This document shows positions 1,560 through 55,197 of a DNA stretch of 64,000 nucleotides, in pieces (the stretch's first letter is position 1; each line of letters begins with the position of its first letter). The stretch lies in the IMG/VR virus record IMGVR_UViG_3300042540_001399, positions 186,001-250,000 of that record; one strand, written 5' to 3'. The notes below the pieces were generated by a model that saw only the letters and a list, made by a program, of their open reading frames with translations, ran no database searches and had not been told where the DNA came from. Position numbers and translations under genes: made by a program.

Positions 1560-2111
1560 ATGAAGTTTATTATAAATGAAAACCAATTTGCCGGATTAAG
1601 ACAGAAACTTAGAAATTCAATTGAAACGGTAGGTGTATACGAAACTTTGAGAAGGTATAATATTACATTAAATATTTTATCGGTAATCTTCGATGGGAAC
1701 ATGCCTGACACATCTTGTTATGATTTGTATGAATTAATTAGAGTATATCTAAGACAAAAAAAGTTCAAAGAAAAAACTTATAAAAATTTGACATTTAAGT
1801 TTAGCTTCGATTCTATGGGTGGGGTTTTAGAATTTGAATGTGAAGATAAAATAAAAAATGATTTTGTAACAGCGTTTGCTACACCATATTGGGATGGAGA
1901 GTGTCACCTTCCAATAGATTTTCAATATTTTGGTTTTATTGGTGGAGGACCAGAATCCGAATTTGAAATAAGTGGTGATTATTTCTACATTGAAGATTTA
2001 CCAAATAAATTTAACAGTTTCAACGATGTAATAAAATGGCTAAATGAAGACTATTTAATAATACTTTACGATAAGTGTAAAGAAGTTTTTGAATATATGA
2101 GAGAACAATGA
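1560..2111 (+). CDS. hypothetical protein, N-terminal MKFIINENQF leader
   Basis: 183-aa ORF; shares the (I/L)-x-E N-terminal motif. Confidence 0.75.
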   Translation: MKFIINENQFAGLRQKLRNSIETVGVYETLRRYNITLNILSVIFDGNMPDTSCYDLYELIRVYLRQKKFKEKTYKNLTFKFSFDSMGGVLEFECEDKIKNDFVTAFATPYWDGECHLPIDFQYFGFIGGGPESEFEISGDYFYIEDLPNKFNSFNDVIKWLNEDYLIILYDKCKEVFEYMREQ

Positions 2112-2965
2112 AAATAATAATTTCTGAAAAACAATATAGAGCACTTAAGAGTAAATTTCTAAACGAAAATGAAGAACTCAATCAGTATGGATTAACTGAC
2201 AGTGAAATGCGTGAAGTTGAAAAGGTTGCCGAAGAAGAAACTAATGATAGTATTGAAAGATTAAAAAATAATATAAAAGAGTTGGAGGATGAGGTTAAAT
2301 TCTATTCAAATTATGACTTTTCTAATATTGATGATGAAAAAGTTAAAGAACATATTATTAAAAACTGGATTGAGCCAAAGAAAAAAGAGTTAGTAAAATT
2401 AAAAAAGAGTCTTGATGAATTTAATTTTGAAGATTGGAAACAAAGAGTTATGCAGTGGCATTTATATAGTGCTGGAGGTGTGGGATATTCTTTTAGATAT
2501 GAAAGATATAAGAACGAGGCTTTAAATAGAAATTTAACTAAAGAAGATATAATTGATCTATTTGTTACCGCATTAGAAGGTGGATCTAACTATTGGTATT
2601 ATATGGACTTACCTGACAACATAAAAAGTTATGGTCAGTATATATCTGAAGCCGTAGGTGAATACATTCTACAGGGAGGTAAAATATATTTTTACGATGA
2701 TGAATTAAGGTCTGAAGTAATGTATAACTTAAGAAAGGGCGAGTATAAGATAGAAGGAGATATAATTGACCAAAAAAGATTTGATGAAGACATAGAAGAA
2801 ACATATTTAGGATATGTTGATATGGATAAAATTTTAGATGCAATATCTCTAATAAAAAAAGAATATCCAAACATTTGGGAAAATATATTATTAGAACAAA
2901 GTGATGCGGGTGACGCTGACGTTTTTTTACAACTTAGTGTTATGGGTGAAGTGGTTTTTGGGTGA
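2108..2965 (+). CDS. hypothetical protein, N-terminal MKIIISEKQY leader
   Basis: 285-aa ORF; 4-nt overlap with upstream stop. Confidence 0.75.
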   Translation: MKIIISEKQYRALKSKFLNENEELNQYGLTDSEMREVEKVAEEETNDSIERLKNNIKELEDEVKFYSNYDFSNIDDEKVKEHIIKNWIEPKKKELVKLKKSLDEFNFEDWKQRVMQWHLYSAGGVGYSFRYERYKNEALNRNLTKEDIIDLFVTALEGGSNYWYYMDLPDNIKSYGQYISEAVGEYILQGGKIYFYDDELRSEVMYNLRKGEYKIEGDIIDQKRFDEDIEETYLGYVDMDKILDAISLIKKEYPNIWENILLEQSDAGDADVFLQLSVMGEVVFG

Positions 2966-3041
2966 TAAAAACCATTAAAAAATTAATTTGTGTTTGAAAT
3001 TATTTTATTTTAAACATTCAATATTTATAAATAAAACATCT

Positions 3042-4073
3042 ATGAAAAGATTACTGATAAACGAACAGGAAAAACTAAGGATATTAAATCTTTATGGTAC
3101 ATCAAAAAATATAATAAAAGAAGAAGTTGTAATCCCATTTTCACAACAATCTGTTTATGATTCAGGTTCATCCGATCCTGCAAAATTTATAAATGACTTT
3201 GTAACAAACTTAATAAAAAAAATTGACGCAGACCCAACGGCAAAAACAATGAGATTAAGTGGTCAAATGGTATTAAGTCGAGGTACTTTTGCCGCAGGTG
3301 CAAGTAATTCTTGGGGTAAGTCCGCAACGGGTTTTGATAGAACGAATGACATGAAACCGGCAAAACCAAGTGAAACGGTTTTGTATCAAAAAAATTATGA
3401 TTTGGCATTAGAAAGGGCTAATAAATTTGAAGAAGCTTTATGGCCAATATTAGACAAATATAAAATAAAAAAATCAACCGATCTTTCTGAAGTTAAAACA
3501 CTGGCATATGTTGTTGACACTGGAGGAAAAAGTGATTCTGCTAGAGACACCACCAAATACCCAAATCCAGGTCAAAAAATAAATGTAAACTTAGTTTTTG
3601 AATATTCACAAAAACTTGAAGAAAATAAAGACGCAACTAAGATCACATCTTTGAATCAATTTAGAAAAAACTTTGTTTTAACTGGTTCTTACTACTGTAA
3701 TGGTAAAAATGGTCTTGGTGTTAGTGCAAATGTTGATACTTATTCTAACCAATGTGCCAAACTACCAGCAAACCTAAAAGATGGGAACCACATTTCCGCA
3801 TGGGAAATAAAATGGAATCCAAACGTAATGAAAAATCCATATACTGTACCTCTATATCGATGGAATTTTTATTGGGGTGCTGACGGAAAAATAAAATCTA
3901 TAGTTGGACAACAATTCAATAACGAAGCAAAATATCCGGTAAATAAAATATTTCCACCATCACAAAATGTTTCTAAAGATGACAAAACACTATTATATAT
4001 GATGGGACTAAATGATAATCAAACGGCGACTGGCGGTGCTTTATATACTAAATTGATAAAACCTTACATTTAA
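3042..4073 (+). CDS. hypothetical protein with possible OmpA-C-like segment
   Basis: ATG 3042 after ATATTTAT 3021-3028; AGAS...NYDLALERA resembles the OmpA-like N..LS..RA motif. Confidence 0.65.
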   Translation: MKRLLINEQEKLRILNLYGTSKNIIKEEVVIPFSQQSVYDSGSSDPAKFINDFVTNLIKKIDADPTAKTMRLSGQMVLSRGTFAAGASNSWGKSATGFDRTNDMKPAKPSETVLYQKNYDLALERANKFEEALWPILDKYKIKKSTDLSEVKTLAYVVDTGGKSDSARDTTKYPNPGQKINVNLVFEYSQKLEENKDATKITSLNQFRKNFVLTGSYYCNGKNGLGVSANVDTYSNQCAKLPANLKDGNHISAWEIKWNPNVMKNPYTVPLYRWNFYWGADGKIKSIVGQQFNNEAKYPVNKIFPPSQNVSKDDKTLLYMMGLNDNQTATGGALYTKLIKPYI

Positions 4074-4636
4074 AAGTAACCTACAGTAACAAAATTTACT
4101 GTTGTGTATATTTTATTTGATTTAGACTTTTTTACTGAACAACTTATCATACCTGAAAATCCATTCGGATCTTTAAACATTGATTCGATTGTTAATTTGT
4201 GATTCTTTGAGGATAACCAACCGTTAAAAATTGATTTTGACAAATCATCATAAGTCAAAAAATTACCTTCGGCCATTGAAATTATTTCTGCCGATTGATC
4301 GATGAAAAGTATACTCGGATTTTTTGAACCACATTTCCCATTTGTAAAATTAAATAATTCTGAGTACAACATTGTGTTCAATCCTTCGTTATTCACATCC
4401 ATTTCCAAATGAAAGGGACTATCTTGTTTAGAATTCAAAGTTGAAGTTTTATCAGAAACACTGTCTCTAAGAGTTTTGGATGAATAAAGTTCACAAAGAC
4501 CAAGTGATTTTCTATATGTATTAATTTGATAAAGTACTTTTGTTTCTAACAAGGTGAAATTGAAATTATTGTAGTCAATTTTTTGTGATAAAGTTGTAAA
4601 TGATAATAAAAAACAAAATAACAAGATCGACTTCAT
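4070..4636 (-). CDS. secreted CAP (SCP-like) domain protein
   Basis: hydrophobic signal peptide; INTYRKSLG and GWLSSKNH motifs typical of CAP domains. Confidence 0.7.
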   Translation of the reverse strand: MKSILLFCFLLSFTTLSQKIDYNNFNFTLLETKVLYQINTYRKSLGLCELYSSKTLRDSVSDKTSTLNSKQDSPFHLEMDVNNEGLNTMLYSELFNFTNGKCGSKNPSILFIDQSAEIISMAEGNFLTYDDLSKSIFNGWLSSKNHKLTIESMFKDPNGFSGMISCSVKKSKSNKIYTTVNFVTVGYF

Positions 4637-4748
4637 AACAATTTTAATATATACAAAGATAGTGTTTTTTAATATCGCTAACTAATTATAACTAAAAAAA
4701 TATACAGATTTTTTTCTGTTGGTTGATATTTATAATAAAAATAATTTT

Positions 4749-7245: not shown

Positions 7246-7315
7246 TTTGTTTTTTTTTGGTTATAACACAAATATACAAGATTTTATGATATTTATAATA
7301 AAAAACAAAAAAATT

Positions 7316-7636
7316 ATGAAAAGAATAGTTAGATTGACAGAATCAGACCTTACAAGAATTGTAAGAAGAGTGATTTCAGAACAAGAAGAAGCCTTTATCG
7401 AACAAATTGATTCGGAATTAGATTCTGTTCCTGAAGAAGGGGAAGATCCTGGTTTATTAGAAAGAATTATAAATAAAATTCAAGATGCCGGTCACGATGT
7501 GGAAATGATTATTAGAAGATTGAAAAGAAACGGTAGAAAATTCAAAAAACACATTTCTAGACATTTCCAACAAGAAATGATACAAGGTAAAAAAATGTGG
7601 AGAAGAATCAGAAAGAAATTAAATAGAATGTTTTAA
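7316..7636 (+). CDS. small protein with LTESDL leader
   Basis: MKRIVRLTESDLTRIVRRVISEQ start; ATATTTAT 7289-7296. Confidence 0.8.
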   Translation: MKRIVRLTESDLTRIVRRVISEQEEAFIEQIDSELDSVPEEGEDPGLLERIINKIQDAGHDVEMIIRRLKRNGRKFKKHISRHFQQEMIQGKKMWRRIRKKLNRMF

Positions 7637-9237: not shown

Positions 9238-9277
9238 TTTTATTCTTTTTTTGATATTTATAAAGAAACATTTTTAT

Positions 9278-10015
9278 ATGAAAAGAATTATTATTTCTGA
9301 AGAAGAAAGAAATCATATTTTAAAATCCCATGGTTTGAACGAATCATTGCCAGAACTTGATGTTTTTCCAATTCAGGGTGGTAAGTATAATATTGGATAC
9401 GACCCAAAATGGGACGACTTCAACAACCCTATGGGTACCGCAAACAGTGACTACTCAAGACAAGCAACCCATGCTGGCGCTGGTGGACATTTACATGGTC
9501 ATATAGGGGTAGATATTTTTGGACCCAAAGGTACACCTATTTTAGCGCCTGTTGATGGTAAAGTTAAATATGGTGGTAACGGTTTAACTGTGATAATAGA
9601 AGATCCCGAAACAGGATATTCACATTGGTTAGGTCACTTGGATACACGTACAGTAAATGAAGGTGATTTTGTATTTGCAGGTCAACAAGTGGGTACTTTA
9701 GGTAATACAGGAAACGCACAGGGAACAGCACCTCACCTACATTACAATATTTACAGTACTAACGCAGGATTTTATTCAGGCGAAGATCCTTTAAACATAT
9801 TAAAAGGGGCGATCAATAAGACACCCAAAAAACCACAAGAAGTAGAGTATGAAGATTTAGGTACGAAATTTAAAAGCGCCTTCAAAAAAATATTTGGATC
9901 CGAAGAAAAAGATGAAAAAGGAAACGTCAAAGCTGAAGATGAACATGATCTTTGGGATAAAATGAAAATTGCTGGAAGTGTTTTCTTTGATAAAATTAAA
10001 AATATCTTTGATTAG
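9278..10015 (+). CDS. M23 family metallopeptidase
   Basis: HIGVDIF, GTPILAPVDG, GHLD, GNTG...PHLHY motifs. Confidence 0.9.
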   Translation: MKRIIISEEERNHILKSHGLNESLPELDVFPIQGGKYNIGYDPKWDDFNNPMGTANSDYSRQATHAGAGGHLHGHIGVDIFGPKGTPILAPVDGKVKYGGNGLTVIIEDPETGYSHWLGHLDTRTVNEGDFVFAGQQVGTLGNTGNAQGTAPHLHYNIYSTNAGFYSGEDPLNILKGAINKTPKKPQEVEYEDLGTKFKSAFKKIFGSEEKDEKGNVKAEDEHDLWDKMKIAGSVFFDKIKNIFD

Positions 10016-10016: not shown

Positions 10017-10304
10017 ATGGGACATATTAGAATTTCTGAAAGAGAACTTATAAATACAATCAAAAAAATTATAAATGAAAATAGTGATTTTGTTACAGGT
10101 ATTTCTGCATCAGAAAGAGCTGAATTAGTTGACGATGTTATAAACAGAATAAATGAATTTGGGGACGAGTATATTATTGCGTTGAATAAATTGAATTATG
10201 AATTTCAACCAAAAAGAATTAAAAGAATGGAAAGACCTAGATCTATGGACGATGTAGAACTACCTAAAGGAATAAAAATTAGTAAAAGTATTTTTCCACG
10301 GTGA
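10017..10304 (+). CDS. small protein with ISERE leader
   Basis: ATG 10017; MGHIRISERELINTIKKIINE. Confidence 0.7.
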   Translation: MGHIRISERELINTIKKIINENSDFVTGISASERAELVDDVINRINEFGDEYIIALNKLNYEFQPKRIKRMERPRSMDDVELPKGIKISKSIFPR

Positions 10305-10984
10305 AAAAAGAACAATTCAACATATTAGAAATTGAAAAAAGAAGGATTCTTGAAATGCATAATTTCAAAGGGAGTTACATTTCTGAAGAAAAAAAACCTA
10401 CTTTTTTGGTTTTGGAACAAGAAGAAGAAAATCCTGTTACAACTAACACAACAAGTATACCACCCGAAGTAAATCTCAACTCAAACAATGAAGATTTACC
10501 TACTATGGAGCCACTTAAACCTGAAAAAATAGATGTCACTCTACCATCACCGGAAATTGTGGAAATTGGTAAACAGTATTTAGGTAAACCATATGTCTAT
10601 GGTGCCCAAGGACCAAATAAATTTGATTGTAGTGGTTATGTAAGATATTTACTATCCAAAACGGGTTTATTGACAGATATAAACGACACATCTAAACTTC
10701 CTAGAACTGCTTCAGGAATGTATTCATCACCATCATTAACCAAAGTTAGTATGGAGGAAATAAAACCCGGTGACTTAGTTTTTTTTAAATCAGGATCAAA
10801 AATTAGTCACGTAGGTTTGATTTCCAAAGTCGATCAGGATGAAAAAAATGAAAAAATATTTCATATGTTACACGCGTCTTCATCATCGGGAACCCAAGAT
10901 ACAGAACAAACTCAATATACAAAAAAAGGTGTAAATAAAACCCCATATTGGGCACCAAAGATCGCCGGTTTCGGAAGAGTTTAA
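10301..10984 (+). CDS. NlpC/P60 (C40) peptidase
   Basis: GKPYVYGAQGPNKFDCSG, LPRTA, PGDLVFF, SHVGL, HASS. Confidence 0.9.
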   Translation: MKKEQFNILEIEKRRILEMHNFKGSYISEEKKPTFLVLEQEEENPVTTNTTSIPPEVNLNSNNEDLPTMEPLKPEKIDVTLPSPEIVEIGKQYLGKPYVYGAQGPNKFDCSGYVRYLLSKTGLLTDINDTSKLPRTASGMYSSPSLTKVSMEEIKPGDLVFFKSGSKISHVGLISKVDQDEKNEKIFHMLHASSSSGTQDTEQTQYTKKGVNKTPYWAPKIAGFGRV

Positions 10985-12468: not shown

Positions 12469-12518
12469 AACCAAATTATATTATTTTTTTTTTATTAATC
12501 AATATATTTATAAGTAAT

Positions 12519-13154
12519 ATGAAAAAAGTTATCTCAGAAGAATTGAATTATATCAAATATTTGTTTGATTATAAAAAAGGTGTTGTTATTTCAGAACAAT
12601 CGGTAGTCACTGATACTACAACTTTAGACCCAAGTAATAAAACTAAATCAACGATAAATCAAACAAAATCTGCTAATTTACCTGTGGTTGACGAGCCAGA
12701 ACCAAGTCCTTCAAAACCAACAATTTCAACAACACAAACAGTTTCAACTACTAATGTTAATACTGTTGAACTTGAATCACAAAAAAAACAATTAGAAACG
12801 CAACTAAGTAGTATCCAATCAAGTTTGGACGTACTTAATAGAAAAAATGAAACTGAAGAAAGACAAAGAATAGAATCTTCAATTATTAAAAAAATAGAAG
12901 ACTTAGACACTTATCTTAGATCAAACTGTGGAAAGAAAATGACAAAACTCTGTAAAGAATACTTGAAAGAAAAAAATTCATATAACCAACAAATGGCAAC
13001 CCTTAGAAATCTTACAACAAAAGAAGGTCCAGGTATGGAAAAAAATGAAAAGGATGCCGCGGACAAAACACAAAAATGGATTACAGTAGTTAACAATATC
13101 ATTGGGTTATTTACAAGTGCAATCGCAGCAACAAAATTGACTAAAACACAGTAA
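12519..13154 (+). CDS. coiled-coil protein with ISEE leader
   Basis: MKKVISEELNYIKYLF; Thr/Pro linker, coiled coil, hydrophobic C-terminus. Confidence 0.7.
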   Translation: MKKVISEELNYIKYLFDYKKGVVISEQSVVTDTTTLDPSNKTKSTINQTKSANLPVVDEPEPSPSKPTISTTQTVSTTNVNTVELESQKKQLETQLSSIQSSLDVLNRKNETEERQRIESSIIKKIEDLDTYLRSNCGKKMTKLCKEYLKEKNSYNQQMATLRNLTTKEGPGMEKNEKDAADKTQKWITVVNNIIGLFTSAIAATKLTKTQ

Positions 13155-14355: not shown

Positions 14356-14435
14356 ACGATAAAAAATAGTTATTGTATACTCATTTGACAAGTCAAAGTA
14401 TAGACATAACCAATAATTATTACTATTTATTTTAT

Positions 14436-17941: not shown

Positions 17942-18472
17942 TTATTGGCCCTTAACCAAATTAATACATTGTTTTAGATATTCTTTAGCTCTTGGTGACG
18001 GAGTATATTCGTCTTCCCTAGTTTGAAGATTTAAAACTCTTTCGATATCTTTGACAAGTTCCGTACCATGTTCATTTTCTTTATATAATTCTATTATTTT
18101 GTCCATAGCTCGGTGACAATCACCAGTAGTTTCATCGTAATAGTTTTTGTTTCGAAACCTATTCAAATTGTTCATCATTTCATATGCCAAATGTGAACCA
18201 CCATCTTTGATATCTTTAAAAAGTCTCAGATTATTTAATATACCTAAAGTATCTACCATAGAGTTAACCCCTGATTGTCTTTTTGTAATACCAGGTGAAT
18301 ATTTTCCATATTCTTCAGCTCTACCTACTATTTCATCAAGAGGGATCATATTTTCTCGAACACATCTTGGTTTCACTTCACCTTTTTTTCTTTTTGTTTC
18401 TGAATCCTCCTCATTTAAAACTTTTCTTGCAATTCTTCTAATGTCTGATTCTGAAATTTTAAACACTTTCAT
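17942..18472 (-). CDS. hypothetical protein with ISESD leader
   Basis: MKVFKISESDIRRIARKVLNEE. Confidence 0.75.
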   Translation of the reverse strand: MKVFKISESDIRRIARKVLNEEDSETKRKKGEVKPRCVRENMIPLDEIVGRAEEYGKYSPGITKRQSGVNSMVDTLGILNNLRLFKDIKDGGSHLAYEMMNNLNRFRNKNYYDETTGDCHRAMDKIIELYKENEHGTELVKDIERVLNLQTREDEYTPSPRAKEYLKQCINLVKGQ

Positions 18473-18546: not shown

Positions 18547-18921
18547 ATGATCAACGAATCAACTATAAAAAAATTAATACATAAAATTATAAATGAAGAG
18601 TTTAATAATTTTATATATCGTGACATTTATGGATCAGTAGAAAATGCTGATTTTATATTAGAAGCAGAATATCAAGGACGAAAAGTCCAACTTGGTAAAA
18701 TAATGCAAGGTGATATTAAAAAATTTAAAGTTTATGTTAAAAATGACAAAGGAAAGGTTGTTAAAGTAAACTTTGGTTTTGGTGGAAAATCTGCAAAAGG
18801 TAAAAGGATGGTTATAAAGAAAAATAACCCCGAAAGAAGAAGATCTTTCAGGGCAAGACATAATTGTGACAATCCTGGCCCAAGATGGAAACCGAGATAT
18901 TGGGCTTGTAGAACTTGGTAA
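18547..18921 (+). CDS. conserved phage-type basic protein (FRARHNC...RYWAC motif)
   Basis: EAEYQGRKV, KVNFG, RRSFRARHNC, RYWACRTW. Confidence 0.7.
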   Translation: MINESTIKKLIHKIINEEFNNFIYRDIYGSVENADFILEAEYQGRKVQLGKIMQGDIKKFKVYVKNDKGKVVKVNFGFGGKSAKGKRMVIKKNNPERRRSFRARHNCDNPGPRWKPRYWACRTW

Positions 18922-20955: not shown

Positions 20956-21360
20956 ATGGCTAAAAGGTACCCACAAAAGTATGAAGAAAAATTATTAGTA
21001 ATAAAAAAGTTAATTTCATTAAAAAGTAAGTTACTTTCGGAATACAATAGAGATTTTACAATCGAACTTGATGATTATGATTATAGTGAACAAGATGACG
21101 AATTCAACGAATTAGTTTTTGAAATCAGAATAAAAAATGTTGAATGTCCTGATTGTGATTTTGAAATCGATGGTCTGAGCCATGATTTACAAACAATAAA
21201 AGATAAAATATTGAATGGATCGTCGTTCAATTTATCCAAAAAATTAAATATAACTGCTGGTAACTCAACTACAAGGGGTGTACTATTAGGTGAACTTGAT
21301 TACAGATTTAGTTACATCCAATCAGTAGTTTTTCATCTATTTATAGATCCAGAAGGTTAA
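20956..21360 (+). CDS. hypothetical protein
   Basis: 134-aa ORF, CPDC motif. Confidence 0.65.
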   Translation: MAKRYPQKYEEKLLVIKKLISLKSKLLSEYNRDFTIELDDYDYSEQDDEFNELVFEIRIKNVECPDCDFEIDGLSHDLQTIKDKILNGSSFNLSKKLNITAGNSTTRGVLLGELDYRFSYIQSVVFHLFIDPEG

Positions 21361-21977
21361 GATCTAAACCTGTCAACAATTTTTCTTACCAATTCTTTTA
21401 CCATAACACCCGAAACAGTCAACGCACCAAAAGAAATTATTCTTTTAACAACATCATCTAACGCAACTTCCGAAAAATCCTTTGTGGCAATTTTGTAAAT
21501 TTCAGGAAGAACTGGTATTAAAAAGGCATATGCTATCATATTACTTACTTTGTGTGTCGTAATACCTAAACTATCAATGAAAGAAAGAAATGTTTTTTCT
21601 AATTTTTCAGTTTTGGTTAAAACTTCGTCAAAAATTTTAACTAAACCTTTTTCTTTAATCATAACCAATATTTTATGTAAAAACTTTTTGTTTGATGTAA
21701 AATAAGTTAAAATTATTCCAGTTAGAATCAAATCTATTTCTGTACCACTAATTTTTATGGGTTGGTTTTCAATAAAGTCAGAAATAGGTCCGATGAATCC
21801 CCCTATTGTTGTTCCCCAGGTTAATAAAAAAGTTAAGTCCAAACCGGCTTGTGTTTTTGCCGATTTAATTATTCTAGTTACAATTGAAGATTGATCTTCT
21901 AAAGTTTTAGAAATACTTTTTTTAGATTCTTCTAATAGAATATATTTATATTGTGATTCTGTAATTATTATATTCAT
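21357..21977 (-). CDS. membrane protein with ITESQY leader
   Basis: MNIIITESQYKYILLEE; several hydrophobic segments. Confidence 0.7.
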   Translation of the reverse strand: MNIIITESQYKYILLEESKKSISKTLEDQSSIVTRIIKSAKTQAGLDLTFLLTWGTTIGGFIGPISDFIENQPIKISGTEIDLILTGIILTYFTSNKKFLHKILVMIKEKGLVKIFDEVLTKTEKLEKTFLSFIDSLGITTHKVSNMIAYAFLIPVLPEIYKIATKDFSEVALDDVVKRIISFGALTVSGVMVKELVRKIVDRFRS

Positions 21978-38727: not shown

Positions 38728-39318
38728 ATGAAAAAGATTATAAGACTTACTGAATCAGATCTCGCTCGTATAGTTGGACGAGTTATTAAAGAAGAATATG
38801 ATGAAGATGATGAAGTGGAGGTTACACCTGAAATGATTATCAAAATGCTTATGGATAGTGCCGAATCAACCCCACAAGAAAATTATGATGACCTATATGA
38901 TTGGATGCAAGATGTATTTTCACCGGTTGAAAGTGAACTTGAGGATATGGGGTATGATATTGACGACCTTCGTATGACATATGATGATGTTATAATGAGT
39001 TTATGGGATGATAATGATGAAGATGATGAGGAATCATTATATGAATCAGATCTCGCTCGTATCGTTAAACAAGTTATTAGTGAATCTAAAAAGAATCTTA
39101 GTAAATCTGAAATATTGAAGATGTCAAAAGATGAGCTAAAAGATGTTTATGGTGAATTGGAAGTAAAAGGTGAGTATCACGGAAACAAAGGAACATTCCA
39201 CCACTTCAAAAGAACTGCAATCGGAGATATTGTCTGTAGTTTTAGAACTGATGACTCAACACCATCAGGATTGAAAAGAAATACTCAAGGAATTAAAGTC
39301 AAAAATTTAGATTTTTAA
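38728..39318 (+). CDS. protein with two LxESDL motifs
   Basis: MKKIIRLTESDLARIV and internal LYESDLARIV; ATATTTAT 38706-38713. Confidence 0.8.
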   Translation: MKKIIRLTESDLARIVGRVIKEEYDEDDEVEVTPEMIIKMLMDSAESTPQENYDDLYDWMQDVFSPVESELEDMGYDIDDLRMTYDDVIMSLWDDNDEDDEESLYESDLARIVKQVISESKKNLSKSEILKMSKDELKDVYGELEVKGEYHGNKGTFHHFKRTAIGDIVCSFRTDDSTPSGLKRNTQGIKVKNLDF

Positions 39319-41536: not shown

Positions 41537-41558
41537 AACTTATTAAAAATTAACCATT

Positions 41559-43726: not shown

Positions 43727-43791
43727 AATATATTTTTTTTTATAAATATAAAGTTTTTCAAAAAGTAAATAGTTTGATAATATTTATTAAT

Positions 43792-46149: not shown

Positions 46150-47604
46150 ATGAAAAAAATAATTTTTATTCTTTTAATATTGTTTTCATTCTACAATATA
46201 ACAATCGCACAAGGACTTATCAAAAATAAAAAAGAAATTACCGAGTCTATGTGGGATCAAGGAGTGCCTGTCTTACCTGAAGATGAATATATTTCATCTT
46301 TAATTGATAAAGTTGGATTCGATAACTTAAGACAAAGAAATAAAGCCGTTAACAAAGAAGAAGCTAAATTGTGTAGAGAAATTGGTATTGCTTTTTACAA
46401 TAGAGAAATGTATGAAGCTGCTGATTGGTATTTGGAAAGAGTACGAGGTTTTGTTGAAGTTGTTGAACTTGAACCTGAAATAGTTTTTGAAACTAAAAAA
46501 GAAGAAACCGAAGAACCTTCAGAAGATTTATCTGTGGAAGATTTGAAAAGTCTACAGTCAGACAAGGTTTTTTTACAAAACCTACCAAAAAGTTATGAAA
46601 ATGTTTCACCTACAGATATGAAAAAATTGGCAGAAGAAATTGAAGGTCAAATAGAAAAACTTATTAAAGAAAAGGAAGAATTACTAAAAAGACACGCTCC
46701 TAAAGAAGTGATAGATGCTAAAGATGCGACTATAGGGTCATTAGGAAAAGAAAAAAAAATCATAGACCTATCAATAGATAAAGACAAACTTAAAAATGAA
46801 ACAAAAGTTTTGGGTATTGAAAAAAGAAATTTGAAATTTTATTTAAATTGGGCAATAGCTATAGGTTTGATATTAATATTAATAATATTTGTTTTAATAC
46901 AGAGAAAAACTATCAAAGGACAGGATAAAGAAATTGATAAACAACTAAATGACATAAATACTAAAAACACGTATTTAGAACATGCGGCAAGAATAATCAG
47001 ACATGATATGCATTCTGGTATAAACACATATATTCCAAGGGGTATATCTTCTTTGGAAAAAAGGCTGACTGTCGACGACATGAAAAATCTTAAGATCGAA
47101 GGTCCAATAAAGATGATTCGTGAAGGTTTAAATCACACCCAAAAAGTTTATAAAAATGTTTATGAATTTACAAATTTAGTTAAACAAAATGTTGTTTTAG
47201 AAAAAACCAAACAAAATATAAAAAATACTTTAGAACAGTTTTTTGTAAAAACATCATACTATAATCAAATCAAAATAAAGAATCTCCCGACTTTAGAAAT
47301 TAATGAAGTTCTTTTTTGTGGGGCAATTGAAAACTTTGTGAAAAATGGTCTAAAATACAATAATAACGAAAATAAAGAAGTTTTAATTTTTGAAGAAGAT
47401 AATTATATAGTAGTACAAGATAATGGTATTGGTATGACATCAACTGAATTTGAAAAACAAATTAAAATAGTTTCTAAAGAAGATATTGGTGAAATCGGTT
47501 TAGGCTTAAATATTTCAATTGCCATTTTAAAAGAACACGGATTTAGTGTTGAATGTGAAAAAAATGAAATTGGAACTAAAATAAAAATTAAATTTAAAAG
47601 TTAA
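46150..47604 (+). CDS. sensor histidine kinase with periplasmic coiled-coil sensor
   Basis: signal peptide, single TM, RHDMH, NFVKNGLKYN, QDNGIG, GLGLNI. Confidence 0.9.
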   Translation: MKKIIFILLILFSFYNITIAQGLIKNKKEITESMWDQGVPVLPEDEYISSLIDKVGFDNLRQRNKAVNKEEAKLCREIGIAFYNREMYEAADWYLERVRGFVEVVELEPEIVFETKKEETEEPSEDLSVEDLKSLQSDKVFLQNLPKSYENVSPTDMKKLAEEIEGQIEKLIKEKEELLKRHAPKEVIDAKDATIGSLGKEKKIIDLSIDKDKLKNETKVLGIEKRNLKFYLNWAIAIGLILILIIFVLIQRKTIKGQDKEIDKQLNDINTKNTYLEHAARIIRHDMHSGINTYIPRGISSLEKRLTVDDMKNLKIEGPIKMIREGLNHTQKVYKNVYEFTNLVKQNVVLEKTKQNIKNTLEQFFVKTSYYNQIKIKNLPTLEINEVLFCGAIENFVKNGLKYNNNENKEVLIFEEDNYIVVQDNGIGMTSTEFEKQIKIVSKEDIGEIGLGLNISIAILKEHGFSVECEKNEIGTKIKIKFKS

Positions 47605-49817: not shown

Positions 49818-49854
49818 ATTTTTGTAACATATTTATTATATAAAAATTAAATTT

Positions 49855-50511
49855 ATGAAAAAGTTGATAACTGAAAACGAAAAAAATAGAATTAGAAAAA
49901 TGAATTCTATTGATGAAAGTTTATTTTCAGATGTGTTGGCATCAATACAAAAATCAGAAACTTTTCAGGATCTTAAAAAGAAATTCAAGGAATTAACGGG
50001 TGTTGACTTTGAAGAAAAAGAAAAGTCGGGAGATGTAAGCAAAGATTTCAAAAATTATAAAATTACCGAACCTAATGATGATGACATCAAGTTTTATAAA
50101 AAAATACTTGAAAAATTGGACGCACCTAATACTAAAGAAAATTTAGCGTTTCTTTACGCGTGGAGACAAGCGGAGGGTGCAAAATCCGCCTTTAACCCTT
50201 TTAATACCACACAAGAAATGGATAGTTCAACATTTATGAACTGTCTGAAGAAAAAAGATAATAAGTGTATTGGGGGAGTTAGAAATTATAAATCTGAAAA
50301 AGATGGAATAGATGCTACAGTCAAAACTTTGAAAAATGGTAGATATGATTGTATTGTTAATGGTTTACAAAAAAATAAAGGGTCAAAAGATATCGCCAAA
50401 TGTAGTTCTTTAGATACTTGGGGAACAAAAGACGGTATTTTAAGAGTTTTAGATGGTGGTAAAATAAATCCACCTGAAATATCAAGATCCACAATAAAAA
50501 AAGTTGATTAA
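49855..50511 (+). CDS. lysozyme/glucosaminidase-like protein with ITENE leader
   Basis: AWRQAEG...NPFNTT...NY.S...GIDATVKTL..GRY. Confidence 0.6.
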   Translation: MKKLITENEKNRIRKMNSIDESLFSDVLASIQKSETFQDLKKKFKELTGVDFEEKEKSGDVSKDFKNYKITEPNDDDIKFYKKILEKLDAPNTKENLAFLYAWRQAEGAKSAFNPFNTTQEMDSSTFMNCLKKKDNKCIGGVRNYKSEKDGIDATVKTLKNGRYDCIVNGLQKNKGSKDIAKCSSLDTWGTKDGILRVLDGGKINPPEISRSTIKKVD

Positions 50512-51156: not shown

Positions 51157-51645
51157 ATGAATATTTTTTTTCTTGACTACGATACCCAAAAATGTGCACA
51201 ATATCATTGCGATAAACATGTGGTCAAGATGGTATTAGAAACTGCACAACTTTTATGTGGGGTTCATCATACAACCCCCCAAGTTACCCCCCAAGTTCCC
51301 TACAAGTTATCCCACAAAAATCACCCATGCGCAATATGGACTCGTGAAAGTTTATCAAACTACTTATATCTTTGTGATCTTGGTTTAGAATTATGTAATG
51401 AATATAGTTTTAGATATGGTAAAACACATAAGTCACAACAAGTAATCGAGTGGTGTCTTGATAATAAACCAAACATAGTTGATAAAGGTTTTACCACACC
51501 ACCAAAAGCAATGCCCGATGAATATAAAGTTTTTGACGTTATTGAATCTTATAGAAACTACTATCGTGGGGCAAAAAAAAGTTTTGCTTCATGGAAAAAT
51601 AGACAAATACCCGATTGGTTTCAAACTGATGAAGTATTTATATGA
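51157..51645 (+). CDS. pyrimidine-dimer DNA glycosylase (endonuclease V-like)
   Basis: MNIFFLD, HCDKHVVKM.LE.AQLL, H.NHPC..W. Confidence 0.8.
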   Translation: MNIFFLDYDTQKCAQYHCDKHVVKMVLETAQLLCGVHHTTPQVTPQVPYKLSHKNHPCAIWTRESLSNYLYLCDLGLELCNEYSFRYGKTHKSQQVIEWCLDNKPNIVDKGFTTPPKAMPDEYKVFDVIESYRNYYRGAKKSFASWKNRQIPDWFQTDEVFI

Positions 51646-53183
51646 TAAAATCATATATGAAAGGTTTATTAAATGAACATTTGACTAGAATAAGATCATT
51701 GATGTCTATCAATGAATCTTTAGTTGATGCATACCCAAAATTTTCGAAAAAAATATTTGATGAAGTAGACCCTACTTGGGGTGGTGGGCCAAATTCGCAT
51801 TCATCAAGACACCCTGATGCATCCGGCAAAGATTGGTTTAGTAATAACGCATACGACATCATGGCACCTGAAGGGACACCAATATATTCAATATCGGAAG
51901 GTTATGTTGATAAAATTACCGACAATCCACCAGGTTTAAGATCAGTTGGTGGTAAGAGAATTTATGGGGACAGTTTAACCATTAGAGGAACAGGGGGTGA
52001 TCCCGATGTTTTCTACACACATGTAACAAAAATTGTTGTTGAAGAGGGACAATACGTTGATAGGGGTCAATTATTAGCATTCATAATCAAAGGGGAGTTG
52101 GGTATACCTGAACACGTTCATGTTGCAGTAAAAGTTGGTGATGTGAAAGATTTCTTAGATGTTGATGGAAACATAAACAGAGTCAATATTGATTTAGTGG
52201 ATAGACTAAAAATCTTACCAACAAACAAGGAACTTGAAGTGACAACCGACCCAAAAACAATAATGGGCGCTGCGGCCGGTCTTACCGCATCAGCTATAAG
52301 TTCTTTAAATATTAATAGACCTGAGTCTGACATCAGTGGCATTGCAACAAGATTCGGTATTAAAGATACTGATGTTAACATGGATTCGGTATCAGGTGTT
52401 TTGAATAAAATAATATTATCTTCTGAAGGTCTTGGTACTGATGAAACTGGAATTCATGATGCAATAAAGAAATTAAAAAGTTGTTATGAACTTGATGAAA
52501 TTAACAAAATTGTAGAAAGAAAAGAAATCGACGGAAAAAAATACAAAGACATTTATGATTATATAAATAGTGAAATGAATTATGGTGATGAGCTGTTTGT
52601 AAAAAGTTTAGTAAAAACCATAAATAATATATGTCCTGATACCGTAACTGATAAAGGTACTCAAATAGTGAAAGTAACAAGATCATCATCTTTAGGATCT
52701 GGAATCGATAGAGTCAGTCCTATAAAATTATTAAATGATCTAAAATCATATGGATTATCTGATAAGGCCGCCAAAGGTGTTGTTGCGAATGCTTTTGGTG
52801 AAAGTGGGTTTAACGTTAAGGCTAAAGGAGATTCTGGACCCAACGCCGAAAACAACACAAGATCAATAAATATAGATGGTAAAAAATACTGTTCGTTTGG
52901 ATTGTGGCAATATAATGTCTGTGGTGGTATGGGGGTTTCTTATTTGAAGAACTATAATATAGATGTTGACAGATCAACAGACGCTGAAAAAATCAGGGTT
53001 CTATTTGATTATAATAAACAAATTGAATTTATGTCTAAAAGAATTAAAGAAGAACAATCCAAAAGCGAAAAAGATGTTAGAACATGGATTGATTGGATTG
53101 TTGATAATGTAGAAAGACCATCAGATAGATACGGTGCAAAAATGAAAAGACAAGAATTTGCAAAACAACAAGGTTGGTCTTAA
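51642..53183 (+). CDS. multidomain wall hydrolase: M23-like, annexin-like repeat, phage tail lysozyme
   Basis: AYDIMAPEGTP..FYTH..HVH; GLGTDETGI; GVVANAFGESG..FGLWQY. Confidence 0.75.
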   Translation: MIKSYMKGLLNEHLTRIRSLMSINESLVDAYPKFSKKIFDEVDPTWGGGPNSHSSRHPDASGKDWFSNNAYDIMAPEGTPIYSISEGYVDKITDNPPGLRSVGGKRIYGDSLTIRGTGGDPDVFYTHVTKIVVEEGQYVDRGQLLAFIIKGELGIPEHVHVAVKVGDVKDFLDVDGNINRVNIDLVDRLKILPTNKELEVTTDPKTIMGAAAGLTASAISSLNINRPESDISGIATRFGIKDTDVNMDSVSGVLNKIILSSEGLGTDETGIHDAIKKLKSCYELDEINKIVERKEIDGKKYKDIYDYINSEMNYGDELFVKSLVKTINNICPDTVTDKGTQIVKVTRSSSLGSGIDRVSPIKLLNDLKSYGLSDKAAKGVVANAFGESGFNVKAKGDSGPNAENNTRSINIDGKKYCSFGLWQYNVCGGMGVSYLKNYNIDVDRSTDAEKIRVLFDYNKQIEFMSKRIKEEQSKSEKDVRTWIDWIVDNVERPSDRYGAKMKRQEFAKQQGWS

Positions 53184-53479: not shown

Positions 53480-54376
53480 ATAGATTATCCGTTCAGGAAA
53501 AGTTTTGTCAGATTCTATGACAAGTAATTGGAATGAAATTTCCATCTTTGAATGATAAAGATATTGGGCCGTGTATAGTCCATAAAATAAACTACGAAAG
53601 TAGGATAAAGTGAACCCTTAAGTGTGTTGGGTTTGCGGCTTCTTCGGGAGCTTGAGTACACAAGCGGGATACCATTTTGGCTTTAGTATTGAGGGCAACG
53701 CTGTAAAGAATAAGGCAAAATGATTTGGCGATGTGGGTCGTCTGATTGAGGTGGGAACACCAATAGGAATAACCCGTAGGAATATTGCAAGACTCAAAGT
53801 CATCCAACTTTAATATTGCGTTTTCCAATATAATAGGTTACTTAAAACCAAGTGGAAGGACCACAAGGTAAGATGTAGAACGAGTGGTGTCGCTAACATC
53901 CTTCACTCAGGTTTACCAAAACCCGGTGATGAAGTAGTCTAAAAATATGGAGGTAGGGATATCTCACGGAGTAGTTGAGTATCGACTCGTTCAAAAGATG
54001 GGTTGGCTCGGTTGGCGGACCACTACTTCGACAATCCACGACACAAAACTTATGACTATTGAATTAAGTCCATTAATTAATACATTAAGGAAAAGTGTCC
54101 GTCAGGTTTGGATGAAAGGTGACTACATAGTAATGAGCCGTTCATTGCACACAGAGATCCCAAGTCGATGTGTAATTATCCGAAAAACCTTTAGTCCCGC
54201 AAGGACGAGTTGGGAAGGCATTCTCGAAAAGAGTAGATTAGGATGAGAGTAATTCAAACCTTAAGGAGTGGTAAACCTAAAAGACCGTCACTGAGAAATA
54301 CTTCTCAAAAGGAAGTGGATAAGAGTAGAAACAATAATGACTCTAAAGGTTCTCACACAAACGTGTAATCTCAGCG
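53480..54376 (+). ncRNA. large ornate ncRNA, GOLLD-like
   Basis: ~0.9 kb, visibly GC-richer than flanks, many GNRA/UUCG-type hairpins, CTGAGA/TCTCAG terminal stem, own promoter and terminator. Confidence 0.7.
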
Positions 54377-54410
54377 TTTTATTTTAATGGAGCCACCGGT
54401 AAAGAACATT

Positions 54411-54437
54411 AGGGACTGATAGTCCCTTTTTTGTTTT
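54411..54437 (+). terminator. intrinsic terminator
   Basis: AGGGACT-GAT-AGTCCCT plus T tract. Confidence 0.8.
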
Positions 54438-54452
54438 ATAATATTTATATAT

Positions 54453-54662
54453 ATGACAACAATTCACGAAGTCCAACAAGTTCTAACAGTAAACACTCCT
54501 TTTGGCGAAGCTCAAGTTTTATTTATTATTGATTATGGAATCCATAGAAATTCAATATGGGTATGTTCATCATTTGATGATGGTAAAATAAGACATTTTG
54601 ATACCAATCAGATATCTGTTACAATAAATCATACATTAAATTTCAATATGAAAGATAAATAA
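54453..54662 (+). CDS. small hypothetical protein
   Basis: 69 aa; ATATTTAT immediately upstream. Confidence 0.7.
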   Translation: MTTIHEVQQVLTVNTPFGEAQVLFIIDYGIHRNSIWVCSSFDDGKIRHFDTNQISVTINHTLNFNMKDK

Positions 54663-54735
54663 TTGCTTTTTCTGATTTATCATATATTTATTATTAAAAA
54701 TATAATAAAATAATAAAAAAAACAAAATTAAAATT

Positions 54736-55197
54736 ATGAAAAGAATTGTTAGATTAACTGAGTCAGATCTTACTAGAATAGTAAGAAGAGTTATTAGCGA
54801 ACAAACAAAACCATCGGCTAAGGATTATTTTGTCAACGAAAATCAAACTTCAATGCCAGGAGGGACAAACTTTTTTGCCGTAACTTCGGTTGGAGCTCCT
54901 ACACCAATTAAAGATGGAAATTACAAAAGTTTCCAAGTAACTGTTTCAGGTGTCCAATATTATAAAAGTACTAGTGGTGAAGGATGGAAAAAAACAAGAA
55001 ATTTTACAGAAAAACTACAACACAGATGTGGAGCTAAAGCTAACTTTTGGGCCGCAGAGTGGAATGGTGGTATTCCTGAAGTAGATACGGGTTCTGCGGG
55101 ATATGTATCAAAAATGGGAGGTGGATTAGAGTCGACTTCAAATACGTACTGTAATTCAAAAGGAGCTAAGAACCAATCAAGTATTGGACTTATGTAA
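54736..55197 (+). CDS. protein with LTESDL leader
   Basis: first 23 aa identical to ORF 7316 with synonymous changes. Confidence 0.8.
   Translation: MKRIVRLTESDLTRIVRRVISEQTKPSAKDYFVNENQTSMPGGTNFFAVTSVGAPTPIKDGNYKSFQVTVSGVQYYKSTSGEGWKKTRNFTEKLQHRCGAKANFWAAEWNGGIPEVDTGSAGYVSKMGGGLESTSNTYCNSKGAKNQSSIGLM

What the first reader, a model, noticed from the sequence alone, without database searches (positions are those of the whole stretch)
1560..55197. Shared N-terminal (I/L)-x-E leader on about 15 unrelated proteins, a candidate capsid-targeting propeptide
Seen: IINE (1560), IISE (2108, 9278), LINE (3042), LTESDL (7316, 38728, 54736), ISERE (10017), ILE (10301), VISEE (12519), ISESD (17942), INE (18547), ITESQY (21357), ITENE (49855), LLNE (51642). 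ORFs 7316 and 54736 share 23 identical residues with synonymous differences, implying selection on the peptide. C-terminal parts include wall hydrolases. Established: T4 prohead protease cuts after (I/L)-x-E and internal proteins carry a capsid-targeting leader. Inference: a modular tag that loads diverse cargo into the head.
Basis: partly seen in the sequence, partly recalled or inferred. Interest (0 to 1): 0.6.

Follow-up and report, generated by a model that had tools for sequence, protein, structure and literature searches.

The report
Shared head-loading leader in jumbo phage
About 27 otherwise unrelated proteins of this 291-kb T4-related jumbo phage (15 in the window) start with the same 22-residue leader carrying two predicted prohead-protease cut sites, most likely a tag that loads varied cargo, including cell-wall hydrolases, into the phage head.

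Summary
The window is bases 186001-250000 of a 290,887-bp, 31% GC uncultured virus. All 15 listed ORFs begin with one bipartite motif. It consists of M-K-x-h-h-(I/L)-(T/S/N)-E, then a capped amphipathic helix ending in h-(I/L)-x-E, usually 13 residues later.

- A profile finds about 27 such ORFs genome-wide, always at the initiator Met.
- Their remaining parts are unrelated.
- Five related 281-304 kb genomes carry 17-32 copies each. T4 and two nearer relatives have none, and 185,579 prokaryote genomes have no exact form-A match.
- In metagenomes the leader is almost invariant on at least 49 unrelated cargo families. Conservation stops at Glu22.

The genome encodes a gp21-type (S77) prohead protease with its His and Ser kept. 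Its major capsid protein has I-N-E|A where T4 gp23 is cut (L-T-E|A). Leader genes share an upstream motif with structural genes.

A conserved disordered protein encoded next to the capsid gene carries the leader helix at both ends. In some genomes it is fused through a full leader to cargo.

The best reading is a T4-CTS-like head-targeting propeptide, a new variant of a known kind. Packaging and cleavage remain untested.

The parts
1560..2111 (+). Leader protein, 183 aa. N-terminus MKFIINE|NQFAGLRQKLRNSIE (form A'). Cargo has no family match.
   Evidence: (E 1.8e-6)
2108..2965 (+). Leader protein, 285 aa. N-terminus MKIIISE|KQYRALKSKFLNE|N. Cargo matches phrog_2355 (unknown function). Probably in an operon with ORF 1560.
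3042..4073 (+). Leader protein, 343 aa. N-terminus MKRLLINE|QEKLRILNLYGTSKNIIKE|E (form B, with an insertion). ATATTTAT at 3021-3028.
7316..7636 (+). Leader protein, 106 aa. Canonical form A: MKRIVRLTE|SDLTRIVRRVISE|Q. ATATTTAT at 7289-7296.
   Evidence: (E 6.4e-11)
9278..10015 (+). Leader protein, 245 aa. N-terminus MKRIIISE|EERNHILKSHGLNE|S (form B). Cargo is a Peptidase_M23 domain. ATATTTAT at 9254-9261.
   Evidence: (PF01551, 1.8e-21)
10017..10304 (+). Leader protein, 95 aa. N-terminus MGHIRISE|RELINTIKKIINE|N.
   Evidence: (E 2.8e-9)
10301..10984 (+). Weak form-B leader, GTG start: VKKEQFNILE|IEKRRILE|MH. Cargo is NlpC/P60 (CHAP-like).
   Evidence: (PF00877, 1.3e-17). Not found by the leader profile.
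12519..13154 (+). Weak variant, 211 aa. N-terminus MKKVISE|ELNYIKYLFDYKKGVVISE|Q. ATATTTAT at 12504-12511.
   Evidence: Not found by the leader profile.
17942..18472 (-). Leader protein, 176 aa. The leader lies at the 18472 end: MKVFKISE|SDIRRIARKVLNE|E. ATATTTAT at 18489-18496. Conserved in G005 (82% identity).
   Evidence: (E 2.7e-10)
18547..18921 (+). Short form, 124 aa. N-terminus MINE|STIKKLIHKIINE|E, with the first half reduced to MINE. ATATTTAT at 18519-18526.
   Evidence: (E 0.08)
21357..21977 (-). Leader protein, 206 aa, ATG at 21977. N-terminus MNIIITE|SQYKYILLEE. ATATTTAT at 21987-21994.
   Evidence: (E 5e-7)
38728..39318 (+). Leader protein, 196 aa. N-terminus MKKIIRLTE|SDLARIVGRVIKE|E. 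A second, internal copy of the helix half (ESDLARIVKQVISE|S) is at residues 109-122, window 39052-39093. ATATTTAT at 38706-38713.
49855..50511 (+). Leader protein, 218 aa. N-terminus MKKLITE|NEKNRIRKMNSIDE|S (form B). ATATTTAT at 49829-49836.
   Evidence: (E 1e-7)
51642..53183 (+). Weak variant, 513 aa. The motif fits best from Met6: MKGLLNE|HLTRIRSLMSINE|S. Cargo is Peptidase_M23 plus Phage_lysozyme2.
   Evidence: Not found by the leader profile.
54736..55197 (+). Leader protein, 153 aa. Canonical form A: MKRIVRLTE|SDLTRIVRRVISE|Q. The cargo is a confidently modelled beta-rich domain with no PDB fold match. The leader is modelled as a detached, low-confidence helix.

Best explanation
The 22-residue leader is most likely a prohead-targeting propeptide, working like the capsid targeting sequence (CTS) of T4 internal proteins but different in sequence and build.

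Proposed mechanism:
1. Late in infection, about 27 proteins (roughly 8% of the genes) are made with the leader.
2. The first half (MK-x-h-h-(I/L)-(T/S/N)-E) resembles the T4 CTS (MKTYQEFIAE).
3. The second half is an N-capped amphipathic helix ((E/S)-(S/K)-(D/Q)-h-x-(R/K)-I-h-(R/K)-x-h-(I/L)-x-E). It docks the protein into the assembling scaffold core.
4. The likely docking partner is the same helix on a conserved, disordered, basic protein encoded next to the capsid gene. That protein carries the helix at both ends.
5. Once the shell closes, the gp21-type S77 protease cuts after the two Glu residues (E9 and E22 in the canonical form). This frees the cargo inside the head and releases small peptides.
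6. On infection the cargo leaves with the DNA. The M23, NlpC/P60, M15 and lysozyme cargos would help cross the wall of a Bacteroidota host. The many unknown small cargos would act on the host.

Shown here: the motif and its regular spacing; its modularity; selection at the peptide level; its restriction to one phage clade; the protease; the matching capsid-protein site; the shared upstream motif; and the natural fusions.

Inferred: binding to the core, cleavage, packaging and ejection.
For: 1. Motif and significance.

2. Unrelated cargo. The 27 proteins show no similarity after residue 26. In metagenomes, 104 leader proteins fall into 49 BLAST clusters. Across three genomes, 83 leader proteins fall into 71 clusters.

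3. Selection on the peptide. ORFs 7316 and 54736 differ by 9 synonymous and 0 non-synonymous codons. Invariant Leu and Arg positions use both TTA/CTT and AGA/CGN codons. Third-position identity is 64% against 87% amino-acid identity. In one orthologous family with 30-40% cargo identity, 16 of the first 22 residues are invariant.

4. Cut-site logic. Among 104 metagenomic leaders, E22 is invariant although it was not part of the search pattern. Position 21 varies (K/N/S/R/A), and conservation collapses after E22.

5. Protease. Peptidase_S77 is present at 80.7 bits. It aligns to T4 gp21 (5JBL) with the LNHP His and SRG Ser kept. It is present in all five related genomes.

6. Capsid protein. FLINE|ATSE aligns with T4 gp23 FLTE|AEIG, and relatives have IVSE|AN and LISE|AN. 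T4 sequences read here show IPII/III MKTYQEFIAE|A, IPI ..ITE|A and gp24 ..LRE|S.

7. Distribution. Related jumbo genomes have 17-32 leaders each. T4, Flavobacterium phage immuto and Microcystis phage Mel-JY01 have none. There are 0 exact form-A matches in 185,579 prokaryote genomes, against at least 117 viral stretches.

8. Upstream motif. ATATTTAT lies upstream of 17 of 27 leader genes against 57 of 336 other genes (odds ratio 8.3, p = 5.5e-7). The same motif precedes the protease, scaffold, capsid, tail tube, baseplate wedge and adaptor genes.

9. Structure. The leader is modelled as a detached helix (pLDDT about 51-54) on a confident cargo domain (pLDDT about 90).

10. The conserved protein next to the capsid gene. 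Its N-terminus is M..IIKKVLxE|ATSD. Its C-terminus carries a leader-like helix, a full leader (9 of 120 homologues) or a full leader plus cargo (15 of 120).

11. Orthologues swap leader forms.

12. Literature. T4 internal proteins carry 10-19-residue propeptides that target them to the core and are removed by gp21. Extra cut sites within propeptides are known in giant phages (PMC9026906 section 2.6; PMC5694885; PMC3012670).
Against: - There is no direct evidence. No virion proteome exists, there is no cultured relative (no tblastn match to the leader among 50,697 GenBank phage records), and no cleavage data.
- The leader has no detectable sequence match to the T4 CTS (0 hits in T4) and is twice as long. 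The helix half is better conserved than a cut site alone would need, so its main role could be something other than targeting for cleavage.
- The residue after the second site (Q/S/N/E/G) is less uniformly small than at the T4 sites read here (A/S).
- Cargo isoelectric points do not differ from the rest of the proteome, unlike the basic T4 internal proteins.
- The timing of expression rests only on an upstream motif shared with structural genes.
- Short h-h-x-E N-termini also occur on at least one probable enzyme (genome 34847), so the loose form of the motif is not specific.
Confidence: 0.6

Rival explanations
1. The leader is a docking or oligomerisation helix that stays on the mature protein. 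It would attach many small proteins to another virion part (tail, baseplate, neck or capsid surface) or to each other, without cleavage. The invariant Glu residues would then be structural: helix capping and salt bridges.
For: The helix half is the most conserved part, with a regular hydrophobic stripe and an N-cap box. The same helix sits at both ends of a conserved structural-cluster protein. Cell-wall hydrolases carried in virions are often tail-borne (established knowledge). The structure model shows a free helix suited to binding a partner.
Against: About 27 different small proteins per genome, with rapid turnover, is unusual for tail parts. The variable x between an invariant (I/L) and Glu, and the sharp end of conservation exactly at Glu22, fit a cut site. 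The same h-x-E|A-T-S context is found at the capsid protein's aligned maturation site. The leader is also used as an internal linker in fusions.
Confidence: 0.15
2. The leader is an intracellular tag unrelated to the virion. It could be a localisation signal (membrane, pole or replication compartment), or a recognition tag for the phage's own ClpC/ClpB-like AAA+ unfoldase or a host protease, timing the activity or turnover of many effector proteins.
For: The window encodes a double-AAA+ Clp-type ATPase at 58330-60390. The helix is amphipathic and basic. Most cargos have unknown function. Wall hydrolases need to be held in check inside the cell.
Against: The genome has no ClpP. The leader is too charged to be a Sec or signal-anchor sequence (seen directly in the sequence). 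It also works at an internal or C-terminal position in the protein next to the capsid gene, which does not suit a signal that must be N-terminal. It shares its upstream motif with structural genes. The h-x-E logic matches the capsid-protein site.
Confidence: 0.15
3. The shared N-terminus is not a functional tag. It would be a by-product of descent or of DNA-level shuffling: a mobile promoter-plus-start cassette, as described for T4-type hyperplastic regions, or a codon or translation-start preference in an AT-rich genome.
For: Leader genes cluster in the least conserved part of the genome, 160-220 kb, and often carry the same upstream motif. Mobile regulatory cassettes mediate shuffling in T4-type phages (PMC2839356, PMC4122927). 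MK followed by Ile-rich starts is common in AT-rich genomes.
Against: Copies differ mostly at synonymous sites: 9 synonymous and 0 non-synonymous changes in one pair, with different codon families for invariant Leu and Arg. Flanking DNA is not similar (42-55% upstream and about 30% downstream, ungapped). The peptide is more conserved across genomes than the capsid protein, which is 72-79% identical. Descent or shuffling may explain how the tag spread, but not why it is kept.
Confidence: 0.05

Closest known systems
Capsid targeting sequence (CTS) of phage T4 internal proteins IPI, IPII, IPIII and Alt, and the variable internal proteins of T-even phages
   Same: It is a short N-terminal propeptide starting with MK and ending in (I/L)-x-E. 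It is shared by otherwise unrelated proteins whose repertoire varies between related phages. The genome has a gp21-family protease and a gp23-family capsid protein whose own maturation site fits the same rule (PMC9026906, PMC3012670).
   Different: - There is no sequence match to MKTYQEFIAE (0 profile hits in T4).
- It is 22 residues with two sites 13 residues apart, plus a conserved amphipathic helix, against 10-19 residues in T4.
- It is on about 27 proteins per genome, against 3 internal-protein genes annotated in the T4 record, plus Alt (PMC5694885).
- Its cargo includes several peptidoglycan hydrolases.
- It also occurs at the C-terminus of, or inside, a conserved protein of the head-gene cluster.
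- Function is untested.
Processed ejection and inner-body proteins of giant phages (phiKZ, 201phi2-1, SPN3US)
   Same: These are jumbo phages that package dozens of proteins in the head. A diverged gp21-like protease cuts after Glu at a three-residue motif. Propeptides carry several cut sites, and diverged paralogues can keep identical N-termini (PMC5694885, PMC9026906).
   Different: Those phages use (S/A/G)-x-E or A-x-E, and their propeptides are often more than 100 residues long with no common short leader across unrelated proteins. The present clade is T4-like in its capsid protein and protease, and uses (I/L)-x-E.
Cargo-loading peptides of encapsulins
   Same: A short, conserved, detachable peptide directs diverse cargo into an HK97-fold shell (established knowledge).
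   Different: Encapsulin peptides are usually C-terminal, bind the shell directly and are not removed by a protease. No homology is implied.

Membership tests
T4-type capsid targeting sequence (CTS) propeptide | Located at the extreme N-terminus, directly after the initiator Met | tested here: met
   All N-terminal profile matches lie at a Met. In viral contigs the Met is exactly 6 residues before the Leu of LTESDL in 113 of 120 matches.
T4-type capsid targeting sequence (CTS) propeptide | Ends in the prohead-protease motif (I/L)-x-E | tested here: met
   There are two such sites in each of the 15 window ORFs. I20-x-E22 is invariant in 104 of 104 metagenomic leaders, with x variable.
T4-type capsid targeting sequence (CTS) propeptide | Genome encodes a gp21-family (Peptidase_S77) prohead protease with catalytic residues | tested here: met
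   PF03420 at 80.7 bits, genome 257724-258149. It aligns to 5JBL with the LNHP His and SRG Ser kept. It matches phrog_207 at 2e-43.
T4-type capsid targeting sequence (CTS) propeptide | Shared by proteins that are otherwise unrelated and vary between related phages | tested here: met
T4-type capsid targeting sequence (CTS) propeptide | Sequence similarity to the T4 CTS (MKTYQEFIAE and relatives) | tested here: not met
   The leader profile finds nothing in T4. Only the general outline is shared: MK, a hydrophobic residue, then h-x-E.
T4-type capsid targeting sequence (CTS) propeptide | Necessary and sufficient for packaging into the prohead core, and removed by the protease in the virion | not testable with these tools
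   This needs virion proteomics or a leader-reporter packaging assay. The predicted protease-leader complex gave no verdict.
T4-type capsid targeting sequence (CTS) propeptide | Made while proheads assemble (late expression) | tested here: inconclusive
   This rests only on a proxy. The upstream motif ATATTTAT is shared with the protease, scaffold, capsid, tail tube and baseplate genes, and is enriched at leader genes (odds ratio 8.3). There are no transcript data.
T4 superfamily of myoviruses (for the genome as a whole) | gp23-family major capsid protein and a gp20/gp21/gp22/gp23-like gene order | tested here: met
   PF07068 at 212.9 bits. Genes in portal, protease and scaffold positions precede the capsid gene. 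The nearest GenBank capsid proteins are 41-46% identical: LR756508, Microcystis phage Mel-JY01 and Flavobacterium phage immuto.

The most novel reading that the evidence does not exclude
The leader's helix may be a self-associating core-assembly module.

- A conserved, disordered, basic, Cys4 protein is encoded next to the capsid gene and has 3,653 metagenomic homologues.
- It carries the helix at both ends, so it could form the internal core network of the prohead.
- About 20-30 cargo proteins per genome, each carrying one helix, would join that network.
- The S77 protease would then dissolve the network at the h-x-E sites.

This would be a programmable protein-packaging system with a very large predicted ejected proteome. 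It would belong to a widespread, uncultured clade of lake jumbo phages that probably infect Bacteroidota. The natural fusions of core protein, leader and cargo would be its evolutionary intermediates.
Probability: 0.3. Interest if true: 0.75.

Novelty: new variant of a known kind. Interest (0 to 1): 0.62.

Why it matters
If the leader is a head-loading tag, sequence alone predicts the packaged and ejected proteome of an uncultured jumbo-phage clade. That is about 20-30 proteins per genome and at least 49 cargo families.

This would mark dozens of unknown small proteins as first-wave effectors against the host. It would also show that the T4 targeting principle has been rebuilt with a different, longer peptide and scaled up about tenfold.

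The helix shared with a conserved core-like protein offers a concrete, testable idea of what a targeting sequence binds. The T4 reviews read here describe that only as affinity for the core, without naming a partner.

The 22-residue tag is also a candidate tool for loading foreign proteins into capsids.

Tried and rejected
- **Predicted complex of the S77 protease with residues 1-40 of ORF 7316.** No verdict (score 0.00, controls not run). This counts neither for nor against binding.
- **Search for a cultured relative.** megablast of 10 kb of the window against GenBank phages found nothing. tblastn of the 26-residue leader also found nothing.
- **Literature search for the peptide string LTESDL.** 0 papers.
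- **Foldseek of the ORF 54736 model against the PDB.** No match at E<=0.001. The cargo fold remains unknown.
- **AlphaFold2 of the conserved protein next to the capsid gene.** Mean pLDDT 44.7, so no fold search was attempted.
- **Isoelectric point of the cargo against the proteome.** No difference (p = 0.37). This does not discriminate between readings.
- **A helix-only profile to count half-leader proteins.** It recovered only the training-type sequences and was too short to be useful.
- **A strict two-site regular expression.** It missed RLTE/KISE-type first sites and undercounts. The profile search is the better measure.
- **ClpP as a partner for a degradation-tag reading.** It is absent from the genome.
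- **Names of NCBI or JGI homologues.** All are 'hypothetical protein'.
- **Not used.** The large representative-protein search, because the claim does not rest on absence of relatives. Also look-up of sequencing runs and read laying.

Full report
**Context.** The window is bases 186001-250000 of a single 290,887-bp virus record, judged 99% complete, with 31% GC. The genome encodes a T4 gp23-family major capsid protein (PF07068, 212.9 bits). It also encodes a gp21-family prohead protease (PF03420, 80.7 bits; phrog_207, 2e-43). The nearest capsid proteins in GenBank are only 41-46% identical: an uncultured 484-kb phage, Microcystis phage Mel-JY01 and Flavobacterium phage immuto. No DNA-level relative was found among GenBank phages. 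A window gene carrying SprB repeats, a PKD domain and a CHU_C type IX secretion signal points to a Bacteroidota host.

The shared element is larger than (I/L)-x-E. It is a bipartite unit:
- The first part is M-K-x-h-h-(I/L)-(T/S/N)-E.
- The second part is (S/K/E)-(D/Q/E)-h-x-(R/K)-(I/L)-h-x-x-h-(I/L)-x-E.

The two Glu residues are exactly 13 residues apart in 8 of the 15 ORFs and 14 apart in 2 more.

Three forms occur:
- Form A: MKRIVRLTESDLTRIVRRVISE.
- Form A': MKIIITESQY...
- Form B: MKxxIISEEEKxRILxxHG.

A profile built from 18 N-termini and run on all six-frame ORFs finds 24 ORFs at E<=0.01. With the weaker variants the count is about 27. All lie between 119 and 264 kb. Every N-terminal match sits directly at a Met, and one protein (ORF 38728) has a second, internal copy of the helix half.

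The motif is enriched at N-termini. [RK]hh.E occurs in 10.6% of N-terminal 30-residue windows against 1.6% of interior ones.

After residue 26 the 27 proteins show no BLASTP similarity, apart from one weak pair of M23 domains.

ORFs 7316 and 54736 share 23 identical residues, with 9 synonymous and no non-synonymous codon changes. Their flanking DNA is not similar.

The recognisable cargos are all cell-wall hydrolases:
- M23 (ORF 9278).
- NlpC/P60 (ORF 10301).
- M23 plus Phage_lysozyme2 (ORF 51642).
- Outside the window, VanY/M15 (genome 183401).
- In a relative, Phage_lysozyme plus LysM.

The other cargos have no family match.

**Spread beyond this genome.**

A word-based protein search with ORF 54736 returned 72 proteins. 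About 30 are full-length orthologues. The rest share only the leader, at 70-96% identity over 15-24% of the query, on different downstream sequences.

In the orthologous family the cargo is 30-40% identical. Sixteen of the first 22 residues are invariant.

Many of these lie on contigs of 269-304 kb. The same pattern hit none of 185,579 prokaryote genomes.

In those viral matches:
- The Met lies exactly 6 residues upstream in 113 of 120.
- Glu22 is invariant in 104 of 104, although it was not part of the pattern.
- Position 21 varies (K/N/S/R/A).
- Conservation collapses after Glu22.
- The 104 complete proteins fall into 49 unrelated cargo clusters.

Invariant Leu and Arg positions use codons from different families. 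Third-position identity is 64% against 87% amino-acid identity. Selection therefore acts on the peptide.

Five related genomes of 281-304 kb all carry the S77 protease and 17-32 leader ORFs each. T4, Flavobacterium phage immuto and Microcystis phage Mel-JY01 have none, and the 484-kb phage has two marginal hits.

Two relatives were fetched whole. Their capsid proteins are 72-79% identical to this one. Across the three genomes, 83 leader proteins fall into 71 cargo clusters, and the leader-rich region at 160-220 kb is the least conserved part of the genome. Orthologous cargos can carry different leader forms.

**Link to head maturation.**

The protease aligns with T4 gp21 (PDB 5JBL), and the LNHP His and SRG Ser are kept.

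T4 sequences read from the GenBank record show these forms:
- IPII and IPIII: MKTYQEFIAE|A.
- IPI: ...STITE|A.
- gp23: ...FLTE|AEIGG.
- gp24: MAKINELLRE|S.

The placement of the cut marks follows published knowledge (PMC9026906, PMC5694885).

In a multiple alignment, the T4 gp23 site aligns with FLINE|ATSE in this phage (Glu60). The relatives have LINE|AA/AT, IVSE|AN and LISE|AN. The (I/L/V)-x-E rule therefore probably holds in this lineage.

The octamer ATATTTAT lies 12-29 nt before the ATG of 72 of 359 genes. It is twice as common on the plus strand (93 against 41). It precedes the protease, scaffold-position, capsid, tail tube, baseplate wedge and adaptor genes. It lies upstream of 17 of 27 leader genes against 57 of 336 other genes (odds ratio 8.3, p = 5.5e-7). 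Several leader genes without it sit in apparent operons behind another leader gene. I read the octamer as a late promoter element. That reading is an inference.

**Structure.** AlphaFold2 on the ORF 54736 family gives a confident beta-rich cargo domain (pLDDT about 90). The leader is modelled as an unpacked helix at residues 9-21, with pLDDT about 51-54, although it is the best-conserved segment. This is what one expects of a segment that works by binding a partner. The cargo fold has no PDB match.

**A new clue outside the window.** The gene directly after the capsid gene (genome 262699-263652, 317 aa) has 3,653 metagenomic homologues. It is predicted to be mostly disordered (mean pLDDT 44.7). 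It is basic and has four invariant Cys residues.

Its N-terminus across 120 homologues is M-x(3-4)-IIKKVLxE|ATSD. That is the helix half of the leader placed directly after Met, followed by the same E|A-T-(S/T)-(D/E) context as the capsid-protein site.

After a conserved MTSYKP(K/R)K, its C-terminal tail takes one of four forms:
- A short leader-like helix, ESVDSLVNNILIE..., in 71 of 120.
- A complete leader at the very C-terminus in 9 of 120. In this genome the tail reads ...TNEVRITESHLVLLIKNILKEL-stop, a leader-like form that scores just under that count's cut-off.
- A complete leader followed in frame by a variable cargo domain in 15 of 120.
- No tail in 25 of 120.

In relative G005 the fusion is real at the DNA level, with no stop codon between the two parts.

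The leader therefore also works at internal and C-terminal positions, joined to a conserved protein of the head-gene cluster. This argues against readings that need an N-terminal signal. It suggests that the helix is an assembly module shared by a core-like protein and the cargo.

**Interpretation.** The best-supported reading (confidence about 0.6) is a head-targeting propeptide that works like the T4 CTS. The proposed sequence of events is late synthesis, docking into the scaffold core through the helix, removal by the S77 protease at the two Glu sites, and ejection of the cargo at infection. The wall hydrolases would help penetration.

Three rivals remain:
- A retained docking helix for another virion part (0.15).
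- An intracellular localisation or turnover tag, possibly tied to the phage's ClpC/ClpB-like ATPase (0.15). The genome lacks ClpP, and the internal and C-terminal occurrences speak against it.
- A by-product of descent or cassette shuffling (0.05). The synonymous-site pattern contradicts it.

The one complex prediction I ran (protease plus leader) gave no verdict and is not counted either way.

**Comparison and novelty.** In function this is closest to the T4 CTS on the variable internal proteins, and to the multi-site propeptides of giant-phage ejection proteins (PMC9026906, PMC5694885, PMC3012670).

It meets the positional, cut-site, protease and modularity criteria of a CTS. It fails sequence similarity to the T4 CTS. 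The defining functional test, packaging and removal, cannot be done here.

It differs from the T4 CTS in five ways:
- Length: 22 residues against 10-19.
- A two-site build with fixed spacing.
- A conserved amphipathic helix.
- Scale: about 27 proteins per genome and at least 49 cargo families.
- Presence at both ends of a conserved core-like protein.

I found no description of it. The peptide string is absent from the searched literature, and no Pfam family covers it. I rate it a new variant of a known kind, with interest 0.62.

Noticed in passing
window 53967-54377 (+): A full-length GOLLD RNA (Rfam RF02032, 320 bits, model 1-416 of 416) lies just upstream of leader gene 54736. ORF 53947-54246 overlaps it, and ORF 54453-54662 lies just downstream. 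The overlapping ORF is probably not a gene.
   Followed up: no
window 55939-56329 (-): A phage-borne tmRNA gene (RF00023, 114 bits, full model). ARAGORN did not list it, but Rfam did.
   Followed up: no
window 35915-42107 (+): A cluster of 22 tRNA genes, which explains the higher GC content (36-39%) of this stretch. Leader gene 38728 sits inside the cluster.
   Followed up: partly
window 14373-16892 (+): An 839-aa protein with SprB repeats, a PKD-like domain and a CHU_C type IX secretion signal. It also matches a Hoc-like head decoration PHROG. This points to a Bacteroidota host, and possibly to a phage protein exported by the host's type IX system.
   Followed up: partly
window 58330-60390 (-): A ClpC/ClpB-like ATPase with two AAA+ domains: AAA, AAA_lid_9, a UVR motif, AAA_2 and ClpB_D2-small. 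It has no Clp_N domain, and the genome has no ClpP.
   Followed up: partly
window 43774-45549 and 46150-47604 (+): Two sensor-kinase-like proteins. The first has GAF, PAS and HATPase_c domains. Both match phrog_857 and a kinase PHROG. This is unusual cargo for a phage.
   Followed up: no
whole genome; in the window e.g. 3021-3028, 7289-7296, 9254-9261, 38706-38713: The octamer ATATTTAT lies 12-29 nt before the ATG of 72 of 359 genes, including structural genes and most leader genes. It contains TATTTATA, the reverse complement of T4's late-promoter core TATAAATA. Its closeness to the ATG implies very short 5' untranslated regions.
   Followed up: partly
genome 262699-263652 (outside the window); G005 141497-142966: The conserved, disordered, basic, Cys4 protein encoded after the capsid gene has 3,653 metagenomic homologues. 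It carries the leader helix at its N-terminus and a leader-like tail at its C-terminus. In some genomes it is fused in frame to a leader plus cargo.
   Followed up: yes
window 23732-32105 (+): Four consecutive large ORFs (732, 835, 697 and 508 aa) have no Pfam or PHROG match. Three start with short h-h-x-E-type N-termini, for example MKNSLELKILKE and MSSFKLSKLILE. They may be large head or ejection proteins.
   Followed up: partly
window 51157-51645 (+): A denV-like pyrimidine dimer glycosylase (Pyr_excise, at the cut-off score) lies directly upstream of, and overlaps by a few bases, the leader-bearing M23-lysozyme gene.
   Followed up: no
genome 180813 and 184624 (outside the window): Two proteins share a different N-terminus, ME(L/T)NRFKQLLES(S/T)LG(D/N)V(R/K)PLISE|Q. 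It also ends in I-S-E|Q and may be a second leader type.
   Followed up: no
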